A DNA stretch of 62,984 bases, counting the filler, from Ministeria vibrans ATCC 50519 (taxonomy: Eukaryota; Protista; Filasterea): NCBI GenBank assembly GCA_943704425.1. It is 5 parts of 5 records of this genome, joined end to end, with 100 filler letters (N's around TTAATTAATTAA, not from the genome) between each part and the next. Parts side by side here need not be neighbours in the genome. Positions count along the whole stretch, not along the records: positions 31,747 to 39,878 come from CALSCP010000324.1; 4 more parts are not named here. The stretch is one strand, 5' to 3'. A program made the translations under genes and the position numbers. Shown here one piece after another: positions 31,747 through 39,878 of the stretch. Every line of letters starts with the position of its first letter. Position 1 is the first letter of the stretch. The notes under the pieces were generated by a model. It worked only from the letters and a program-made list of their open reading frames with translations. It did no database searches and was not told the origin of the DNA.

Positions 31747-34700
31747 GGTGACGATTGCGAGACCAACATCAACGAGTGTGGCTCGAACCCTTGCCAGAAC
31801 GGCGCCACTTGCGTCGATGGCGTCAACGGTTACACTTGCTCGTGCGCCTGTGGCTGGACTGGAGCATTGTGCTCGTCGAACATCAACGAGTGCTCGTCGA
31901 ACCCATGCCAGAACGGTGCGACATGTAACGACGCGACATGCGGCTACACTTGCACGTGCGCGCCCGGTTTCTTCGGTGCTCATTGTGACTCGAACACGAA
32001 CGAGTGCGAGTCGAACCCGTGCCAGAACGGAGGAACGTGCACTGACGCTGTCAACGGCTACAGCTGCGCGTGTGCGTGCGGCTGGGAGGGAGTCACTTGT
32101 GGTACCAACACTAACGAGTGTGCGTCCAACCCGTGCCAGAACGGCGGTGTGTGCTCCGATTTGGTGTGTGGTTTCTCGTGTGCATGCGCGGACGGATACG
32201 CCGGCGTCAACTGCGAGACGAACATCGACGAGTGCGCCAGCAACCCGTGTGTCAACGGCGCTTGTGTCGATGGCGTCAACGGCTTCACTTGCAACTGTGA
32301 GTGCGGCTGGGCTGGTCCTCTGTGCTCGTCGAACATCAACGAGTGCTCGTCGAACCCGTGCCAGAACGGTGCGACATGTAACGACGCGACGTGTGGCTAC
32401 ACTTGCACGTGCGCTCCTGGCTACTTCGGGCCCAACTGCCAGTCCGACACGGACGAATGCGAGTCGAGCCCATGCAAGAATGGAGGTGTGTGTACTGACG
32501 AAGTTGATGGATTCTCGTGCTCGTGCGCGTGCGGTTTTGCCGACACTACATGTTCGACCAACATTAACGAGTGCGCGTCGCTGCCGTGCCAGAACAACGG
32601 AGTGTGCAGCGATGCTGAATGTGGCTACACGTGTGCATGCCCTACTGGCTTTGTTGGTACTCTGTGCGAGACCAACGTCGACGAGTGTGCTTCCGATCCT
32701 TGCCAGAACGGCGGCACGTGTGTTGACGGCGATAACTCATTCTCTTGCAACTGCCCTTGCGGCTTCGAGGGCGCTCTCTGCTCCGTGAGCATCAACGAGT
32801 GCGCATCGAACCCGTGCCAGAACGGTGGTGTCTGCAACGACGCGACCTGCGGCTACTCGTGTGCCTGCGCAACCGGTTACTTTGGTGTTCTGTGTGACTC
32901 AGAGACCAACGAATGCGGTTCGAGTCCGTGTCAGAACGGCGCTACTTGCTCCGACGTTGTTGGCGGCTACACTTGCGCCTGCCCTCTCGGCTACGTTGGC
33001 GACGAATGTCAGACCAACGTGGATGAGTGTGCTTCGAACCCCTGTCAGAACCTGGGCACCTGCACCGACCTTGTGAACGGCTACTCTTGTGGGTGTGTTG
33101 TCGGCTTCACCGGGACTCACTGCGAGACCAACATTGACGACTGCGCCGCGGCTGCTTGTTCCAAGAGCTCTACTTGTATTGACGGTGTGAACAGCTACAC
33201 GTGCCAGTGTGCCTGCGGCTGGACTGGGGCTCATTGTACTACCAACATTGACGAGTGCCAGGGACACACATGCCTTAACGGCGCAACCTGTGTCGATGCA
33301 ACGTGTGACTACTCATGTACATGTGCCCCCGGCTACGGCGGCGACTTCTGCGAGACGGAGCTTAGTGAGTGCAACTCGAGTCCTTGCGAGAATGGCGGTG
33401 TGTGCAGCGAGCCCACCGTCGGCTCGTTCTCGTGCGCGTGCCCGTGTGGCTACGAAGGTGCTACGTGCACCGTCAACACTAACGAGTGCGCATCGGCACC
33501 CTGCCTGAATGGCGGCTTCTGCACCGACGCTGTTTGTGGCTACTCCTGCACGTGCGCAGCCGGCTACGCTGGCGACCACTGCGAGACTAACATTAACGAG
33601 TGCTCATCGCAGCCGTGCCTGAATGGCGCCACCTGCATCGACGGCCTCAATGGATTCTCGTGCAACTGCCCCGCCGGCTACACCGGCAACGACTGTGGAT
33701 CAGATGTTGACGAGTGTGCGTCGATGCCGTGCCAGAACAGTGGCACGTGCACCGATGCGCTTGCAGGCTTTACTTGTCAGTGCACACCGCACTTTGCCGG
33801 TGACACGTGCGAGACGGATATTGACGCGTGTGGCTCCAACCCGTGTCTTAACGGTGCTACCTGCACCGACACTCCTACGGCTTACACGTGCGCCTGTGTG
33901 CCTGGCTATGTCGGTGACAACTGCGAGTCGGAGGTTGATGAGTGCGCTTCGTCGCCTTGTATGAACGACGGTCTGTGCGTGGACGCCATTAACGGATATA
34001 CGTGTGTGTGCGAGGCGTTCTATGTGGGCGACCAGTGCGAGACGGACACGGACGAGTGCCGCGAGTCACCTTGCGAGAATGGTGCGTCGTGCGTGAACCA
34101 CAACGGCGAGGCACTGTGTCTGTGCCTTGAAGGTTACACCGGTATCGACTGCGAGACGCAGACGACGCCGTGTGCTTCGGTGCCTTGTCAGAATGGCGGT
34201 TCGTGTAACACGGTCAACGCCGAGTTGTATTCTTGTACTTGTGTCCAGGGCTACACTGGTGGTCACTGCGAGACGTTGATGAACCTGTGCGATTCGTCAC
34301 CATGCCAGAACGGCGCCGACTGCGTCCTGGGCGAGCTTCTCACCTCGTACGAGTGTGTGTGCCCGCCCTTTACGACCGGCGTGCTGTGTGAGACGCAGAT
34401 GATTGTGACTGTGTGTACCTCGCAGCCGTGCCTTAACGGTGCCACGTGTATCGACCAGGTGACTAATTACGCATGTCAATGTGACTTTGGTTTCACCGGC
34501 GACATCTGTGAGACCAACCTCGACGACTGCCTGCCAGACATTTGCTTCCACGGCGGCACCTGTGTCGACGGTGTCGACTCCTACTTGTGCGAATGTGTTG
34601 ATGGTTTCTTTGGCGAGCATTGTGAAGAGACCATTGACGAGTGCACGTCGAGTCCATGCGAGAACGGCGCTACGTGCCACGACGGTGTCTTGAGCTACAA

Positions 34701-36300
34701 CTGCGCTTGCCCCATTGGCTTTGCCGGAGCACATTGTGAGCAGAACACCGACGAGTGTTCGTCATCGCCCTGCGAGAATGGCGCCACTTGTGTTGATGGC
34801 GACAACTCCTTCACGTGCACTTGCCTGTTTGAATTTGCGGGCGAGACGTGCGGTCGCTTGAAGAACGACTGCGAACTGAACGGCTCTCCGTGCCTGAACA
34901 ATGGTGTGTGCGACACGATGGAGGGCGTGACTGGCTGTGTGTGCGAGTCGGGTTACACAGGCGACCAGTGCGAGAGCGAGATCAACGAGTGCGACTCATC
35001 GCCGTGCGGCAACGGCGGCACCTGTACCGACCAGCTTGATGGCTTCTCGTGCGCTTGCCTCGCCGAGTACACGGGTGTGCAGTGCCTCGACGACTACAAC
35101 GAGTGCCCGACATCTCCATGTGCTAACGGCGGTACCTGTACCAACACTGCACCCGGATTCTCGTGCGCCTGTGTACCCGGCTGGATTGGCGACACATGCG
35201 ACGTTGCCGACCCGTGCCTGTCCAACCCGTGCGGTGTCGACTCCTACTGCTCGACATCGGGCCTGGCATACGTATGCACTGATGCGTGCAGTCCGTCTGG
35301 CTGCCTTAACGGTGCCACCTGCACCACGGGTGTCTCAAACGACGTGTGTGTGTGCCCCACCGGCTACACTGGCGACCTGTGCGAGTCGACCTTCGACCTG
35401 TGCGACGCTCAGCCGTGCTTTAACGGCGGCACTTGCATCCAGGGCGCTACCCATGTCGAATACACGTGCGCTTGTCTCGCGTCGCAAACTGGCGATCATT
35501 GCGAGACGTCCATTGCAAGCGGCACTAAACTGTCGTCGTCTAGCGGCGCTGTGCCCACATCCATTCTTATTGCTGTTGTGGCCGGTCTGGCCGCACTTGT
35601 GGCGCTCGTGGCTATTGTTGCCATTGTGCGCCGTCGTCGCCAGGAGCCTTCTGCTCCTATGGATCAGGTACCCCTCGACCGTACGACTTCGGTTGAGTAC
35701 ACAACAGCCTGGGGCGAGGCCGAGAATTTTATGGGTGCGCGCAAGAACATGCCAAAGCGTGACCAGAGCATCATTGGCGGAGCCACGGAGGGTACATCAG
35801 CGTCGCCCAAGTCACTGCGCTCGCCAAGCATGAAGAAGAAGAAGGATGCGGCGGGCGTGATGGAGGCGAAGCGCGTCAACCCATTGCTTGCATCGGGTAT
35901 GGCGGAGCCTGTTGTCGACGACGACTGGTACGAGCGCAACTCGGCGGCTCTGCCGGGCATTTCCAACTGGATCTACGAGGACGAGCCTGACGAGACACCG
36001 TCGCCGTCTGCGTCGCGCACCAGCAGCTCGATTATGGCAAGTCTTGCGGCAAGCCTTGCTGCCGACAAGGCGGCAGCGGCCGCCGCATCGTCGGCACGCC
36101 GCACATCGCGTAACGGCTATGAGCAGGCACCCGACATTGAGAGTGGCTCTGATGAGGACACTGGTCCCGTCACTCGCTCGGCTGCGCGCCGTCAGCCTTC
36201 CTTCCAGCCTGGTCTGGATGCCATGGAGTGCGAGGCGGATCGTCCCAGCCTGCGTCGCCGCAGCTCGCGAACACCGCGCGTCAACGAAGACGAGACGTGA
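31747..36300 (+). CDS. Type I membrane protein with ~33 cbEGF-like repeats, one TM helix and a low-complexity Tyr-containing tail; 5'-partial
   Basis: Uninterrupted ORF of xNECxSxPCxNGxTCxDxxxxYxCxCxxGxxGxxC repeats. TM ILIAVVAGLAALVALVAIVAIV-RRRR at ~35563-35640. No LNR or ankyrin repeats. Confidence 0.93.
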   Translation, partial: GDDCETNINECGSNPCQNGATCVDGVNGYTCSCACGWTGALCSSNINECSSNPCQNGATCNDATCGYTCTCAPGFFGAHCDSNTNECESNPCQNGGTCTDAVNGYSCACACGWEGVTCGTNTNECASNPCQNGGVCSDLVCGFSCACADGYAGVNCETNIDECASNPCVNGACVDGVNGFTCNCECGWAGPLCSSNINECSSNPCQNGATCNDATCGYTCTCAPGYFGPNCQSDTDECESSPCKNGGVCTDEVDGFSCSCACGFADTTCSTNINECASLPCQNNGVCSDAECGYTCACPTGFVGTLCETNVDECASDPCQNGGTCVDGDNSFSCNCPCGFEGALCSVSINECASNPCQNGGVCNDATCGYSCACATGYFGVLCDSETNECGSSPCQNGATCSDVVGGYTCACPLGYVGDECQTNVDECASNPCQNLGTCTDLVNGYSCGCVVGFTGTHCETNIDDCAAAACSKSSTCIDGVNSYTCQCACGWTGAHCTTNIDECQGHTCLNGATCVDATCDYSCTCAPGYGGDFCETELSECNSSPCENGGVCSEPTVGSFSCACPCGYEGATCTVNTNECASAPCLNGGFCTDAVCGYSCTCAAGYAGDHCETNINECSSQPCLNGATCIDGLNGFSCNCPAGYTGNDCGSDVDECASMPCQNSGTCTDALAGFTCQCTPHFAGDTCETDIDACGSNPCLNGATCTDTPTAYTCACVPGYVGDNCESEVDECASSPCMNDGLCVDAINGYTCVCEAFYVGDQCETDTDECRESPCENGASCVNHNGEALCLCLEGYTGIDCETQTTPCASVPCQNGGSCNTVNAELYSCTCVQGYTGGHCETLMNLCDSSPCQNGADCVLGELLTSYECVCPPFTTGVLCETQMIVTVCTSQPCLNGATCIDQVTNYACQCDFGFTGDICETNLDDCLPDICFHGGTCVDGVDSYLCECVDGFFGEHCEETIDECTSSPCENGATCHDGVLSYNCACPIGFAGAHCEQNTDECSSSPCENGATCVDGDNSFTCTCLFEFAGETCGRLKNDCELNGSPCLNNGVCDTMEGVTGCVCESGYTGDQCESEINECDSSPCGNGGTCTDQLDGFSCACLAEYTGVQCLDDYNECPTSPCANGGTCTNTAPGFSCACVPGWIGDTCDVADPCLSNPCGVDSYCSTSGLAYVCTDACSPSGCLNGATCTTGVSNDVCVCPTGYTGDLCESTFDLCDAQPCFNGGTCIQGATHVEYTCACLASQTGDHCETSIASGTKLSSSSGAVPTSILIAVVAGLAALVALVAIVAIVRRRRQEPSAPMDQVPLDRTTSVEYTTAWGEAENFMGARKNMPKRDQSIIGGATEGTSASPKSLRSPSMKKKKDAAGVMEAKRVNPLLASGMAEPVVDDDWYERNSAALPGISNWIYEDEPDETPSPSASRTSSSIMASLAASLAADKAAAAAASSARRTSRNGYEQAPDIESGSDEDTGPVTRSAARRQPSFQPGLDAMECEADRPSLRRRSSRTPRVNEDET

Positions 36301-36368
36301 TTTTGAGAGAGGAAAGAAGAGGGAAAGTGATATAGAGAGTGGTATTTTGTTTAATCCCTTTTGGTGAG

Positions 36369-36412
<44 letters not shown>

Positions 36413-36745
36413 GAGCAACTATATTCATATCTATTTCAATAAACACAACGTTATTATTGCAAAAAGCATCTTTTTCAGACACGACTTGTTTAGCTTATTG
36501 TGTTTTTTCTATTGTGCCCTTGTCTCCCTTGAATAATTGAATACGAAATAATTATTAATTAAAATTAATATAGTATATTATATTTTTTCTTGCTTGCATT
36601 TGACCTTCTTGGCATCCGAACCTATTCGCATTTCGCCCTCAATATCTTGCATTGCTGTTGTGCAAGTCAGGCGTGATTTGGCAGATTTGAATTTGCAAGG
36701 TGTCAAACCGAATTCCACCCGTCATCGATGCCTTGGGCCACCGCA

Positions 36746-39700
36746 ATGCGCGTTGCCGTCGTCGCGGCAGCGCTCCTATTGTGTACAACTTTGAATGGCG
36801 TTGGTGCTGAGCGCATCGACATTGAAATCGGACGGCGCAGTGGTACGTGCGTTTGTGATGTTCGTTGCTGCTGATTGACGTCAATATGACTGTGGATTTC
36901 ATTTTTGCAGTTCCTCTCGCTCTTCCCGAGGGCCCTGTGACCCTCTCCCGCGTCACACGAAGCAATTCGTGCAGTAGGTGAGTCGCTGGGGGGTCGCACA
37001 CTCGTATTTCTGTTCTAATTGGCTTACAGTGCCAATTTCAAAAAAAAAAAAAATAGCGAAAAGAGAAAACGCCATCTTTTTTCACACATGAATGAATATC
37101 TCTCATTGATTCTCCATTCCAGCAACCCATGCAACAACGGCGGCACATGCGAAGACACCGTCACGTCGTCGGAGGTTGACGTCGACATGGTCTTCATGCT
37201 GGACAACTCGGGCAGCATGTCGTCCAGTGACATTGAGTATATGATGTTGGCAGTCAAAGAGACGGTGAGTCCTTTCTTCTTCTTCTTTTTTTTTTTTNNN
37301 NNNNNNNTTTTTTTTTACTTTTGTTCTGAATGATTGTCTTGCGTCGACTTTCCCTTTCTGCTTCATTCAGATTGCCGTGCTCAAAGCCAACGATCGTGTT
37401 GCTATTTTCAGCTTTGGCTTTTCCAATGGGCTGACGGGCGGCGGCAGTCAGTACGACGCACGCCCGTTTCATGTGCTTCCGTTCACCGCCATGACGGACG
37501 CGAACAAGCTGGTGGTGACGCAGACGCTGCGGAATGTCGTGTACTCGATTCAGACGTGGACGCCATTGTGGGACACAGTGTGGGCGGCCATCCACTACTC
37601 AGACGAAAACACACGCGACTCCGCGCGTGGAGTGGTGATTGTCATGACGGACGGCGAGGACACGTCGAGTGTCATCAACAACGTCCAGAGCGACGACTCT
37701 GATGAGATTCCCGACGGCGACTGGCTCGGTCGTCAGGGCTACGACGACGCCAACATCCGCGACGACTACGGGCCCGCCTACGTCGGCTCCGACGGCCACG
37801 ACGGCGGCTGCAACCGCGCTCCCATGCCTGTCTTCTGCGTCGGTCTGCAGGTGTCCAGCTACAATGCATACCGTCTCACCGAGGTCGCCAGGACGTCCGG
37901 TAAGAACGATTGCTTAAATTTTGTCCTTCGTGTTTTTTTTTATTATTTTTTTTATGCATTTATTTATTTATCGAATCTTCTTTCTCATGATGCAATAATA
38001 ATACTGACACTAATAATATAATATTATATATGTTTTGTGTTATTATAGGTGGAAAATACTTTGGGACTTCGAGCAGTTCGCAACTGGTTGACATTTACAA
38101 GTCAATCTCGCAGGACGTGATGAACTTTCATATGTGCAAGTGCCCCGAAGGGTACACCGGCGTATCATGCGAGACGCGCCTCTTTGAGGTGTGTGACTCA
38201 TTGCCGTGTACCAATGGCGGCACGTGTCTGAACGAGCCTACTACATTTTGGTGCCAGTGTCCGCCTGGCTTTACTGGACGTCAATGCGAGACTTCCATCA
38301 ACGAGTGTGCCTCCAACCCGTGTCGCAATGGTGCGACATGCTACGACGGCAACTCAGGTTACATCTGTCAGTGCGCATGTGGCTACGAGGGACTACATTG
38401 CGAGGCCGACACAAACGAGTGTGCGAGCAATCCGTGCACGAATGGCGGAACTTGCTTCAATGAGGTCTGCTCATTCTGGTGCCAATGCCGTCCCGGGTAC
38501 ACTGGTCCTCAATGTCAGTACAACATCAACGAATGCTCATCCAATCCGTGCGCCAACGGTGGTAGCTGTATTGACGGCGTCAACTCGTACAAGTGTGATT
38601 GTCCCTGCGGCTGGACCGGCTTCCAGTGCACGTCGAACATCAACGAGTGCTCGTCCAACCCGTGTCAGCATGGCTCGACGTGTGTCGACTCTGTGTGTGG
38701 CTACACGTGTATCTGCGCCCCGGGCTACTATGGCGTTCACTGCCAGACGGACGACAACGAGTGTGCGTCGAATCCGTGCCGGAACGGCGCCACTTGTTAC
38801 GACCAAGTCAACGGTTACACCTGTTCGTGTGCTTGCGGCTATGCGGGCGTAACGTGTGCGTCTAACATCAACGAGTGCGCGTCGAACCCGTGTTTGCACT
38901 ACGGCACATGTACCGACAAGGTGTGTGGCTATGAGTGCACGTGTCCCCCTGGATACGCGGGGCCCCAGTGCCAGACTAATGTGAACGAATGCGCATCGAA
39001 CCCGTGTGCCAACGGCGCGACGTGCATCGATCGCGACGATGGCTACAGCTGCATTTGCGCATGTGGCTGGCAGGGAACGCACTGCGACTCGAACATCAAC
39101 GAGTGCGCGTCGACACCCTGCCAGAATGGCGGCACGTGTTTTGATGAAGTCTGCGCATACTGGTGCTCGTGTCCGCCAGGATACTTTGGTCTGCTATGCC
39201 AAACCAATGTTGACGAGTGCAGCAGCAATCCATGCGAGAACGGCGCAACTTGCCACGACTCTATCAATGGCTACTACTGTACCTGCCCCTGCGGCTACGA
39301 GGGAGTTCATTGTGCCACCAATACCAACGAGTGTGCATCAAACCCATGCTTGCACGACGGGTCGTGTACCGATATGACATGTGGCTACCAATGCAATTGC
39401 CGCCCTGGCTACTCCGGACTTCAGTGCCAGTACGACAACAACGAGTGTGCGTCAAACCCGTGCGCCAACGGCGGAACCTGTGTTGATCAGGTCAACGGCT
39501 ACATTTGTCACTGCGACTGCGGTTGGACTGGCACTCAGTGCTTGTACAACATTGACGAATGTGCTTCAACACCCTGTCAAAATGGCGCAACATGCATTGA
39601 TAAAACATGTGGGTTTACGTGTGATTGTCCCCCGGGTTACCACGGTCTTCTTTGTCAAACGAACACGAACGAGTGCGCCTCCAACCCTTGTACTAATGGC

Positions 39701-39878
39701 GGTACATGCGTTGATACGGTCAATGGGTACACGTGTGCGTGTTCCTGCGGCTACGAGGGATCGCACTGTCAAACGAACACCAACGAGTGTGTCAGCACTC
39801 CTTGCCAAAATGGCGGCACGTGCTTTGACGAGGTGTGCTCGTTCTGGTGCTCGTGCAGTCCTGGGTTCACTGGCGTGC
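36746..39878 (+). CDS. Secreted or membrane protein: signal peptide, RVTR site, EGF split by a VWA domain, then at least 15 cbEGF repeats; 3'-partial
   Basis: Exons splice in frame: MRVAVVAAALLLC...RVTRSNSCSSNPCNNGGTCEDT-VDMVFMLDNSGSM...TPLWDT...VIVMTDGED...VFCVGL...SGGKYF...LVDIYKSISQ-FHMCKCPEGYTGVSC, then the EGF array. Confidence 0.9.

What the first reader, a model, noticed from the sequence alone, without database searches (positions are those of the whole stretch)
31768..33585. Disulfide-'stapled' EGF pairs: 7-Cys cbEGF domains in strict complementary A-B pairs
Seen in sequence: type A repeats carry an extra Cys two residues after C5 (CACGW, CECGW, CACGF, CPCGF, CPCGY). Each is followed at once by a type B repeat with an extra Cys in the major hairpin turn (DATCGY, DLVCGF, DAECGY, DATCDY, DAVCGY). 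There are 7 such pairs with no orphan extra Cys. The two intervening repeats and all membrane-proximal repeats have neither extra Cys. Established knowledge: in tandem cbEGF pairs (fibrillin, Notch), the C5-x-x-G-aromatic loop of domain n packs against the hairpin turn of domain n+1, and unpaired EGF cysteines are normally deleterious (e.g. CADASIL). Inference: the two extra Cys form an inter-domain disulfide that locks EGFs into covalent two-domain units, giving a rigid or force-resistant distal rod. I do not know of a described EGF class built this way.
Basis: partly seen in the sequence, partly recalled or inferred. Interest (0 to 1): 0.85.

Follow-up and report, generated by a model that had tools for sequence, protein, structure and literature searches.

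The report
Paired seven-cysteine EGF domains, likely stapled
Two neighbouring genes of an unidentified eukaryote encode long rods of calcium-binding EGF domains in which one domain with a spare cysteine is always followed by a domain with a matching spare cysteine at their shared contact face, so each pair is probably locked by an extra disulfide bond, an arrangement I could not find described elsewhere.

Summary
Gene 1 (31747-36300, cut at its 5' end) reads ABABABABAB-NN-ABAB, then 16 ordinary EGFs, a membrane span and a tail. Gene 2, downstream, reads N-ABABABABABABAB up to the piece's edge. Type A has an extra Cys at C5+2, directly before the Gly-aromatic packing motif. Type B has one at C3+5, in the turn of the major hairpin. 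All 14 A and 14 B Cys are kept, although the AB units are only 51-73% identical in DNA and saturated at synonymous sites.

Both motifs are about 3 in 10,000 among roughly 7,100 database EGFs. One unrelated metatranscriptome protein (P0378) has a single A immediately followed by a B, and its two homologues lack both Cys together. Published structures place these two positions at the canonical cbEGF-cbEGF interface. An AlphaFold model of ABAB fits Notch1 EGF11-13 at 1.5-1.9 A.

An A(n)-B(n+1) interdomain disulfide is therefore the best reading (about 0.7). It is not proven: the tools return no coordinates, so the S-S distance was never measured. No relatives with AB arrays and no paper describing them were found. 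The source organism remains unknown. I rate it a new variant of a known kind, of moderate interest.

The parts
31747..36300 (+). Gene 1, a coding fragment cut by the 5' edge of the piece. It is one open frame with at least 32 EGF repeats, a membrane span and a cytoplasmic tail, ending in a stop at 36298-36300.
   Evidence: ORF list. Pfam finds EGF, hEGF and EGF_CA only, with no Notch LNR or ANK domains. Repeat typing.
31762..32895 (+). First block of five A-B pairs (repeats 1-10).
   Evidence: All extra Cys are invariant in alignment A1.
32899..33123 (+). Two ordinary six-Cys cbEGF repeats (11-12) between the AB blocks.
33127..33582 (+). Second block of two A-B pairs (repeats 13-16).
33586..35502 (+). 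Sixteen ordinary six-Cys EGF repeats plus one four-Cys half-EGF (about 35200-35271), on the membrane-proximal side. Only 7 of the 19 ordinary (N-type) repeats of the two genes keep the Ca-binding N-terminal consensus.
35563..35628 (+). Predicted membrane span (ILIAVVAGLAALVALVAIVAIV) followed by an RRRR stop-transfer sequence.
   Evidence: read from the sequence.
35629..36297 (+). Cytoplasmic tail of 223 aa with no recognised domain.
   Evidence: Searches gave no significant family.
36746..37264 (+). Gene 2, exons 1-3 (36746-36842, 36911-36977, 37123-37264; an alternative ATG lies at 36728). They encode a signal peptide, then C1-C3 of an EGF domain, then the start of a VWA domain with DNSGS.
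   Evidence: Frames and GT-AG splice sites read by eye. Pfam VWA positions 1-31, E 0.005, below threshold.
37371..37899 (+). Gene 2, exon 4: the body of the probable VWA domain.
   Evidence: Pfam VWA positions 43-126, E 2.6e-4, 21.7 bits against a cut-off of 23.8. Splice sites.
38049..39878 (+). Gene 2, last exon seen. It encodes the end of the VWA domain, C4-C6 of the split EGF, one ordinary EGF, then the AB array, and is cut by the 3' edge of the piece.
38291..39878 (+). Gene 2 AB array: six complete A-B pairs, then a seventh A (39659-39769) and its B, which is truncated at 39878 but shows CFDEVCSFWC.

Best explanation
Both genes encode secreted or membrane-anchored rods of Notch-like calcium-binding EGF domains. 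In the part of the rod far from the membrane (gene 1), or next to the VWA head (gene 2), the building block is a two-domain unit. The first domain (A) carries a seventh Cys two residues after C5, directly before the Gly-aromatic motif that packs on the next domain. The second domain (B) carries a seventh Cys five residues after C3, in the turn of the major beta-hairpin that receives that aromatic. The two spare Cys most likely form a fourth, interdomain disulfide across the A-to-B interface, on top of the usual 1-3, 2-4 and 5-6 bonds in each domain. That bond would fix the pair covalently next to the Ca site of B. The result would be a rod in which every second junction is stapled and therefore stays stiff and joined whatever the calcium level or load. 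Shown here: the pattern, its conservation under purifying selection, its rarity, its independent recurrence as an adjacent pair, and the location of both Cys in the elements known to form the interface. Inferred: the bond itself and its mechanical consequence.
For: Pattern and order: ABAB arrays begin with A and end with B. All 28 extra Cys are kept in units with 51-73% nucleotide identity, dS at least 1 and dN/dS about 0.2. Both positions lie in the interface elements. The B Cys is residue 60, between strands 54-58 and 61-65 of the model. The A Cys precedes G-W/Y/F. [quoted passage not shown] PMC3906135 describes the Gly-aromatic packing motif. 12 of 13 B repeats have the Ca-binding N-terminal consensus, 13 of 13 have D/N at C3+2, and 14 of 14 A repeats have the aromatic. 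The ABAB model has pLDDT 89.6 and fits Notch1 EGF11-13 at rmsd 1.5-1.9 A over about 118 residues. Any three consecutive domains include one A-to-B junction. Trp at the packing position occurs in 7 of 14 A repeats against 1 of 32 others (p 4e-4), as if the aromatic had adapted to a neighbouring disulfide. Independent case: P0378 (loci L056, L057 and L082, three samples) has one strict A followed at once by one strict B. Its homologues P0379 and P0380 have Lys-Pro or Leu-Pro at the A position and Asn or Asp at the B position, so they lack both Cys together. P0379 does share a third odd Cys (the C-C-C domain) with P0378. The chance that a given A is followed by a B is about 3e-4.
Against: No S-S or C-beta distance could be measured, because the structure tool returns no coordinates. 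Only one of the five AF2 models was confident; their mean pLDDT values were 89.6, 78, 76, 64 and 58. Orphan A-like or B-like repeats do exist elsewhere (P0242, P0302, L087 and L089), so a seventh Cys at these positions is tolerated without the partner. The alternation within the window is largely inherited from duplication of one AB unit, so the 14 pairs are not 14 independent events. Only one independent example was found. No relatives with AB arrays were found in which covariation could be counted.
Confidence: 0.7

Rival explanations
1. The spare Cys make disulfides between chains, not within a chain. The AB region would be a covalent zipper that joins two or more rods side by side, as teneurins do with the odd Cys of EGF2 and EGF5.
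For: Teneurin EGF2 and EGF5 each carry a free Cys used for covalent cis-dimers (PMC9058538). Orphan seventh-Cys EGFs exist in other proteins. P0378 has an odd total of 101 Cys.
Against: Strict adjacency and fixed order A then B. The two different positions both map to the same intramolecular interface. In P0378 the A and B Cys come and go together, while the third odd Cys is conserved on its own. Two thiols held next to each other in the ER would be expected to bond with each other first.
Confidence: 0.12
2. The bond is within the chain but the wiring is not canonical. The extra Cys would re-pair with canonical Cys, for example C-prime with C6 in A and C5 across to B, giving a shuffled seven-disulfide two-domain knot rather than a simple added staple.
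For: Three Cys in five residues (C-x-C-x-C) leave room for alternative pairings. Some EGF domains, such as thrombomodulin EGF5, are known to be wired differently (from my own knowledge, not tested here).
Against: The model keeps the canonical EGF fold and matches Notch1 EGF11-13 closely. All other consensus residues of cbEGF are retained.
Confidence: 0.08
3. The extra Cys are not bonded at all. They would be free thiols, redox or metal sites, or a neutral feature carried along by duplication of one AB unit.
For: The pattern within the window could in principle be inherited from a single ancestral unit.
Against: Synonymous sites are saturated while all 28 Cys persist and dN/dS is about 0.2. Free thiols in secreted EGF arrays are generally harmful (CADASIL literature listed). 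The same pair recurs in P0378.
Confidence: 0.05

Closest known systems
Tandem calcium-binding EGF rods of Notch and fibrillin (e.g. Notch1 EGF11-13, PDB 2vj3, 4cue, 4d0f)
   Same: Six-Cys EGF core, the D/N-x-D/N-E/Q Ca consensus, the aromatic at C5+4 packing on the next domain's hairpin turn, and a one-residue-spaced 38-aa period. Identity is 42-48%. The AF2 model fits at 1.5-1.9 A. O-glucose and O-fucose consensus sites are present in most repeats.
   Different: Notch and fibrillin junctions are held only by Ca and hydrophobic packing. No aligned solved chain has Cys at C5+2 or C3+5; Notch1 has Glu and Ala there in the best match. Gene 1 has no LNR, NOD or ankyrin parts.
Teneurin EGF2 and EGF5 (odd-cysteine EGFs)
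   Same: EGF repeats with an odd number of Cys are used on purpose for an extra disulfide (PMC9058538).
   Different: The teneurin odd repeats are not adjacent, and their bond joins two chains. Here the odd repeats are always adjacent, in a fixed order, and the Cys lie on the shared interface.
Eight-cysteine EGF relatives (laminin-type LE, integrin beta I-EGF)
   Same: An EGF scaffold reinforced by a fourth disulfide. This comparison is from my own knowledge of these families.
   Different: In those families both extra Cys lie in one domain, giving eight per domain. Here each domain has seven and the pair spans two domains.
P0378, a VWA-EGF-chitin-binding protein from JGI metatranscriptome contigs Ga0099807/8/9
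   Same: It has one strict A (CECECGF) immediately followed by one strict B (CYDKVCGYVC) inside an ordinary cbEGF array.
   Different: It has a single pair rather than an array. Overall identity to the window is about 55% in the EGF region only, and the rest of its architecture is unrelated. Its homologues lack the pair.

Membership tests
Calcium-binding EGF-like domain (Pfam EGF PF00008, hEGF PF12661, EGF_CA PF07645) | Six Cys with C1-C6 spacing of the EGF type | tested here: met
   Pfam EGF E 1e-88 with 16 stretches in 31747-33585. The regex matches 46 repeats.
Calcium-binding EGF-like domain (Pfam EGF PF00008, hEGF PF12661, EGF_CA PF07645) | Ca consensus D/N-x-D/N-E/Q before C1, D/N at C3+2, and an aromatic before C4 | tested here: met
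   24 of 27 A and B repeats have the N-terminal consensus and 26 of 27 have D/N at C3+2. EGF_CA E 1e-23.
Calcium-binding EGF-like domain (Pfam EGF PF00008, hEGF PF12661, EGF_CA PF07645) | Canonical fold and rod-like tandem arrangement | tested here: met
   This rests on a prediction only. The AF2 model has pLDDT 89.6 and fits Notch1 EGF11-13 at rmsd 1.5-1.9 A, TM 0.83-0.90 on the target.
Calcium-binding EGF-like domain (Pfam EGF PF00008, hEGF PF12661, EGF_CA PF07645) | Disulfides 1-3, 2-4 and 5-6 and no others | not testable with these tools
   Connectivity needs coordinates or mass spectrometry. Seven Cys per domain shows that at least one further partner is needed.
Notch receptor | LNR repeats, heterodimerisation domain, RAM and ankyrin repeats after the EGF array | tested here: not met
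   Pfam on 33586-36297 finds EGF families only. The tail has no domain.
Teneurin-type dimerising EGF | Non-adjacent odd-Cys EGFs in a type II protein with the teneurin superfold | tested here: not met
   The odd repeats are strictly adjacent. The membrane span lies C-terminal of the EGFs. The EGF_TEN Pfam hit only reflects generic EGF similarity.
Laminin-type or integrin-type eight-Cys EGF | Eight Cys within one domain | tested here: not met
   Each A or B repeat has seven Cys.
VWA domain (gene 2 head) | Match to the VWA profile with the MIDAS motif DxSxS...T...D | tested here: inconclusive
   There are two colinear matches below threshold: profile positions 1-31 at E 0.005 and 43-126 at E 2.6e-4. 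DNSGS and MTDGED are read in the sequence. There was no PDB sequence hit. The single-sequence AF2 model of exon 4 failed with pLDDT 33.

The most novel reading that the evidence does not exclude
A-B is a distinct, previously undescribed two-domain EGF module: a covalently stapled cbEGF pair with seven disulfides. It arose or was retained at least twice, once in this unidentified eukaryote's tandem gene family and once as a single pair in an unrelated metatranscriptome protein. It makes every second junction of an EGF rod independent of calcium.
Probability: 0.55. Interest if true: 0.6.

Novelty: new variant of a known kind. Interest (0 to 1): 0.5.

Why it matters
EGF rods are the backbone of Notch, fibrillin, Crumbs and many matrix proteins. 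Their stiffness is thought to depend on calcium and one aromatic contact, and a single odd cysteine in them causes disease (CADASIL, Marfan). A natural design in which two odd cysteines on neighbouring domains cancel out as an interface staple would show that the canonical cbEGF junction can be cross-linked without changing the fold. It would give a simple sequence rule (C5-x-C-G-aromatic followed by C3-x4-C-G/S/A/D-aromatic) for annotating such pairs. It would also offer a template for engineering calcium-independent rigid EGF rods, and caution against calling every seven-Cys EGF a defect.

Tried and rejected
- Measuring the S-S distance: structure prediction returns only pLDDT and DSSP, and no model file appears in /data. 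The test was not possible.
- Three word-index protein searches found no AB arrays other than P0378: scanned, scanned. The profile search of 1.84 billion representatives (scanned) also found none. The window's own fragments would have scored 1414 and 910 bits, within the listed range. Comparable AB-array proteins are therefore absent from that library, though proteins with few pairs could be hidden below rank 150.
- The genome-contig scan did not find the window's locus.
The Atlas gave only generic EGF clusters or nothing. An exact look-up of one exon ORF was not on record.
- Domain-level similarity does not separate A from B beyond the Cys (A-A 58%, A-B 57%, B-B 60%). I could not tell whether the two ordinary repeats 11-12 are a unit that lost both Cys.
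- The single-sequence AF2 model of the VWA exon failed.
Exons were searched one at a time.
- Four literature searches found no description of paired seven-Cys EGFs. The library is incomplete, so this is not proof of absence.

Full report
**What is there.** The piece (31747-39878) carries two genes on the + strand. Exons are 56-63% G+C and the spacer and introns are 40-50% G+C.

Gene 1 is one open frame from the 5' edge to a stop at 36298-36300. Pfam sees only EGF-type families in it: EGF at E 1e-88 to 1e-91, hEGF and EGF_CA. There are no Notch LNR or ankyrin domains. A regex that types each repeat by its Cys pattern gives A B A B A B A B A B N N A B A B followed by 16 ordinary repeats. After these come a Ser-rich stalk, a membrane span at 35563-35628 and a 223-aa tail without a recognisable domain.

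Type A has a seventh Cys two residues after C5 (C-x-C-x-C-G-W/Y/F). Type B has a seventh Cys five residues after C3 (C3-x4-C-G/S/A/D-Y/F-x-C4).

**The pattern reaches further than the finding.** About 430 bases downstream, a second gene starts at ATG 36728 or 36746. I read its exons by eye from the three frames and canonical GT-AG sites:
- 36746-36842
- 36911-36977
- 37123-37264
- 37371-37899
- 38049 onwards

Its last exon reads one ordinary EGF, then A B A B A B A B A B A B A and a B cut by the piece's edge. The piece therefore holds 14 A and 14 B repeats, always adjacent and always in the order A then B. Arrays that follow an ordinary repeat begin with A, and arrays that precede one end with B. 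This fixes the unit as A(n)-B(n+1).

**More than chance, and more than recent duplication.**
- At that rate, 14 A among 46 repeats has a probability near 4e-39.
- The alternation inside one protein could simply be inherited from duplication of one AB unit, so I measured the age of the units. Eleven units of equal length are 51-73% identical in DNA. The median proportion of synonymous differences is 0.79, dS is at least 1 for every pair, and dN/dS is about 0.2.
- The extra Cys use both TGT and TGC codons.
- All 28 extra Cys are invariant, while the units are 51-68% identical in protein.

This is long-term purifying selection on both Cys.

**Where the two Cys lie.** The best solved matches, Notch1 EGF pairs, align without gaps and have Glu and Ala at the two positions. 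An AlphaFold2 model of A-B-A-B (31990-32439, using an alignment of ten such stretches) has mean pLDDT 89.6 in the best of five models. The other four range from 58 to 78.

The model's DSSP puts the B Cys (residue 60) in the two-residue turn between strands 54-58 and 61-65. The A Cys (residue 30) lies just before the short strand that starts with the aromatic. The model superposes on Notch1 EGF11-13 at 1.5-1.9 A over about 118 residues. Any three consecutive domains include one A-to-B junction.

The literature states which elements touch in such rods. [quoted passage not shown] The motif is described as Gly-aromatic (PMC3906135). The A Cys is the residue directly before that Gly-aromatic, and the B Cys is in that turn.

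All 14 A repeats keep the aromatic. 12 of 13 complete B repeats keep the Ca-binding N-terminal consensus and all 13 keep D/N at C3+2, so the canonical interface is expected at nearly every A-B junction. Trp is the packing aromatic in 7 of 14 A repeats but in only 1 of 32 other repeats (p 4e-4). This would fit an aromatic lying on a disulfide.

**Independent evidence for coupling.** A scan of metagenome contigs with the ABAB alignment returned 80 loci with 1130 typed EGFs. Only two of the 80 loci, fragments of one transcript, contain any A or B. They contain exactly one A immediately followed by one B.

The encoded protein, P0378, is 1093 aa: signal peptide, VWA, EGF array and a chitin-binding-like end. 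It is found with identical sequence in contigs from three JGI samples.

In an alignment with its homologues P0379 (49% identical) and P0380, the A position is Lys-Pro or Leu-Pro and the B position is Asn or Asp. Both Cys are therefore absent together. A third odd Cys in the preceding repeat (C-C-C) is shared by P0378 and P0379 but not by P0380. So the A and B Cys behave as a self-contained pair. The chance that a given A is followed by a B is about 3e-4.

**What weakens the case.**
- I could not measure the S-S distance. The structure tool gives no coordinates and none are stored.
- Only one independent example was found.
- Orphans exist. One strict A in P0242 and one strict B in P0302 each lack the partner. 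Two B-like repeats sit in eukaryote-like contigs binned into a 'Dehalococcoidia' MAG (L087 and L089). These are genomic and may be split by introns.
- P0378 has 101 Cys, so it must carry at least one unpaired or intermolecular Cys.

**Rivals.**
- Intermolecular bonding has a precedent in teneurins, where EGF2 and EGF5 each carry a free Cys for covalent cis-dimers (PMC9058538). However, those repeats are not adjacent, and nothing there explains two different positions that meet on one interface.
- A shuffled wiring inside the pair, or unbonded thiols, cannot be excluded without mapping. They fit the retained canonical consensus and the purifying selection less well.

**Comparison with the known, and novelty.** The repeats are members of the cbEGF/hEGF family by every feature I could test. 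The protein is not a Notch receptor, because it lacks LNR and ANK.

Neither the PDB sequence search nor the fold search nor four literature searches turned up an EGF class with complementary seven-Cys neighbours. The profile search of 1.84 billion representative proteins listed only ordinary EGF giants at 618-2682 bits. The window's own fragments would score 1414 and 910 bits. Proteins with comparable AB arrays are therefore absent from that library.

I rate this a new variant of a known kind: a stapled two-domain cbEGF unit. The functional reading (a calcium-independent, force-resistant distal rod) is inference.

**Limits.**
- The organism is unknown.
- The spliced model of gene 2 was not joined in any tool. 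Its exons were searched separately.

Noticed in passing
window 36911-38140: In gene 2 the first EGF domain appears split by a whole inserted domain. C1-SSNP-C2-NNGGT-C3-EDTVTSSE is followed by about 260 aa of a probable VWA domain (DNSGS, WTPLWD and MTDGED motifs). Then comes NFHM-C4-K-C5-PEGYTGVS-C6. So a VWA domain seems to be inserted in the major hairpin of an EGF domain. The VWA assignment rests on two colinear Pfam matches below threshold and the motifs. There was no PDB sequence hit and the AF2 model of exon 4 alone failed.
   Followed up: partly
window 36300-36746: Only about 430 bases separate the stop of gene 1 from the start of gene 2. Both genes are on the same strand and both carry AB arrays, so this looks like a tandem paralogous family in a compact genome. 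Gene 2 has short GT-AG introns of 68, 145, about 106 and 149 nt.
   Followed up: partly
window 31762-35502 and 38177-39769: Most repeats carry the O-glucose consensus C1-x-S-x-P/A-C2 (38 of 46) and a Ser or Thr just before C3, as in the O-fucose consensus (36 of 46). Fourteen carry the O-GlcNAc-type C5-x-x-G-x-S/T-G. The organism probably has Notch-type EGF glycosyltransferases.
   Followed up: no
window 35200-35271: A four-Cys half-EGF (C-LSNP-C-GVDSY-C-STSGLAYV-C) lacking the C5-C6 subdomain sits between repeats 30 and 31.
   Followed up: no
window 37265-37370: Intron 3 of gene 2 holds an assembly gap (N run at 37298-37307) flanked by long T runs. A GA-type microsatellite follows the stop of gene 1, seen as an ERERER run in the translation near 36375-36410.
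   Followed up: no
L057:44-3325 (protein P0378): This protein has a repeat with three consecutive Cys (YECCCDEGW), which is conserved in homologue P0379. It also has an extra Cys in one linker (HCDCPIDNC). With 101 Cys in total, at least one Cys is unpaired or intermolecular.
   Followed up: partly
L084:9296-11584: A 762-aa ORF in a 3.47-Mb contig of a Pseudomonadota MAG lies next to a GAPDH gene. It encodes a lipoprotein-type signal peptide, about 15 Notch-like EGF repeats (56% identical to the query stretch) and a C-terminal domain with a VFCDMTTDGGGYT motif. It looks like a bacterial protein with eukaryote-like cbEGF repeats. L092 (a Polyangiales MAG, G+C 0.71) has about 30 such repeats.
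   Followed up: partly
L087 and L089: Contigs binned as a Dehalococcoidia MAG have G+C 0.41-0.44 and exon-like blocks of two EGF repeats. They are probably eukaryotic contamination of the bin. They hold two B-like seven-Cys repeats without an A-type predecessor.
   Followed up: partly
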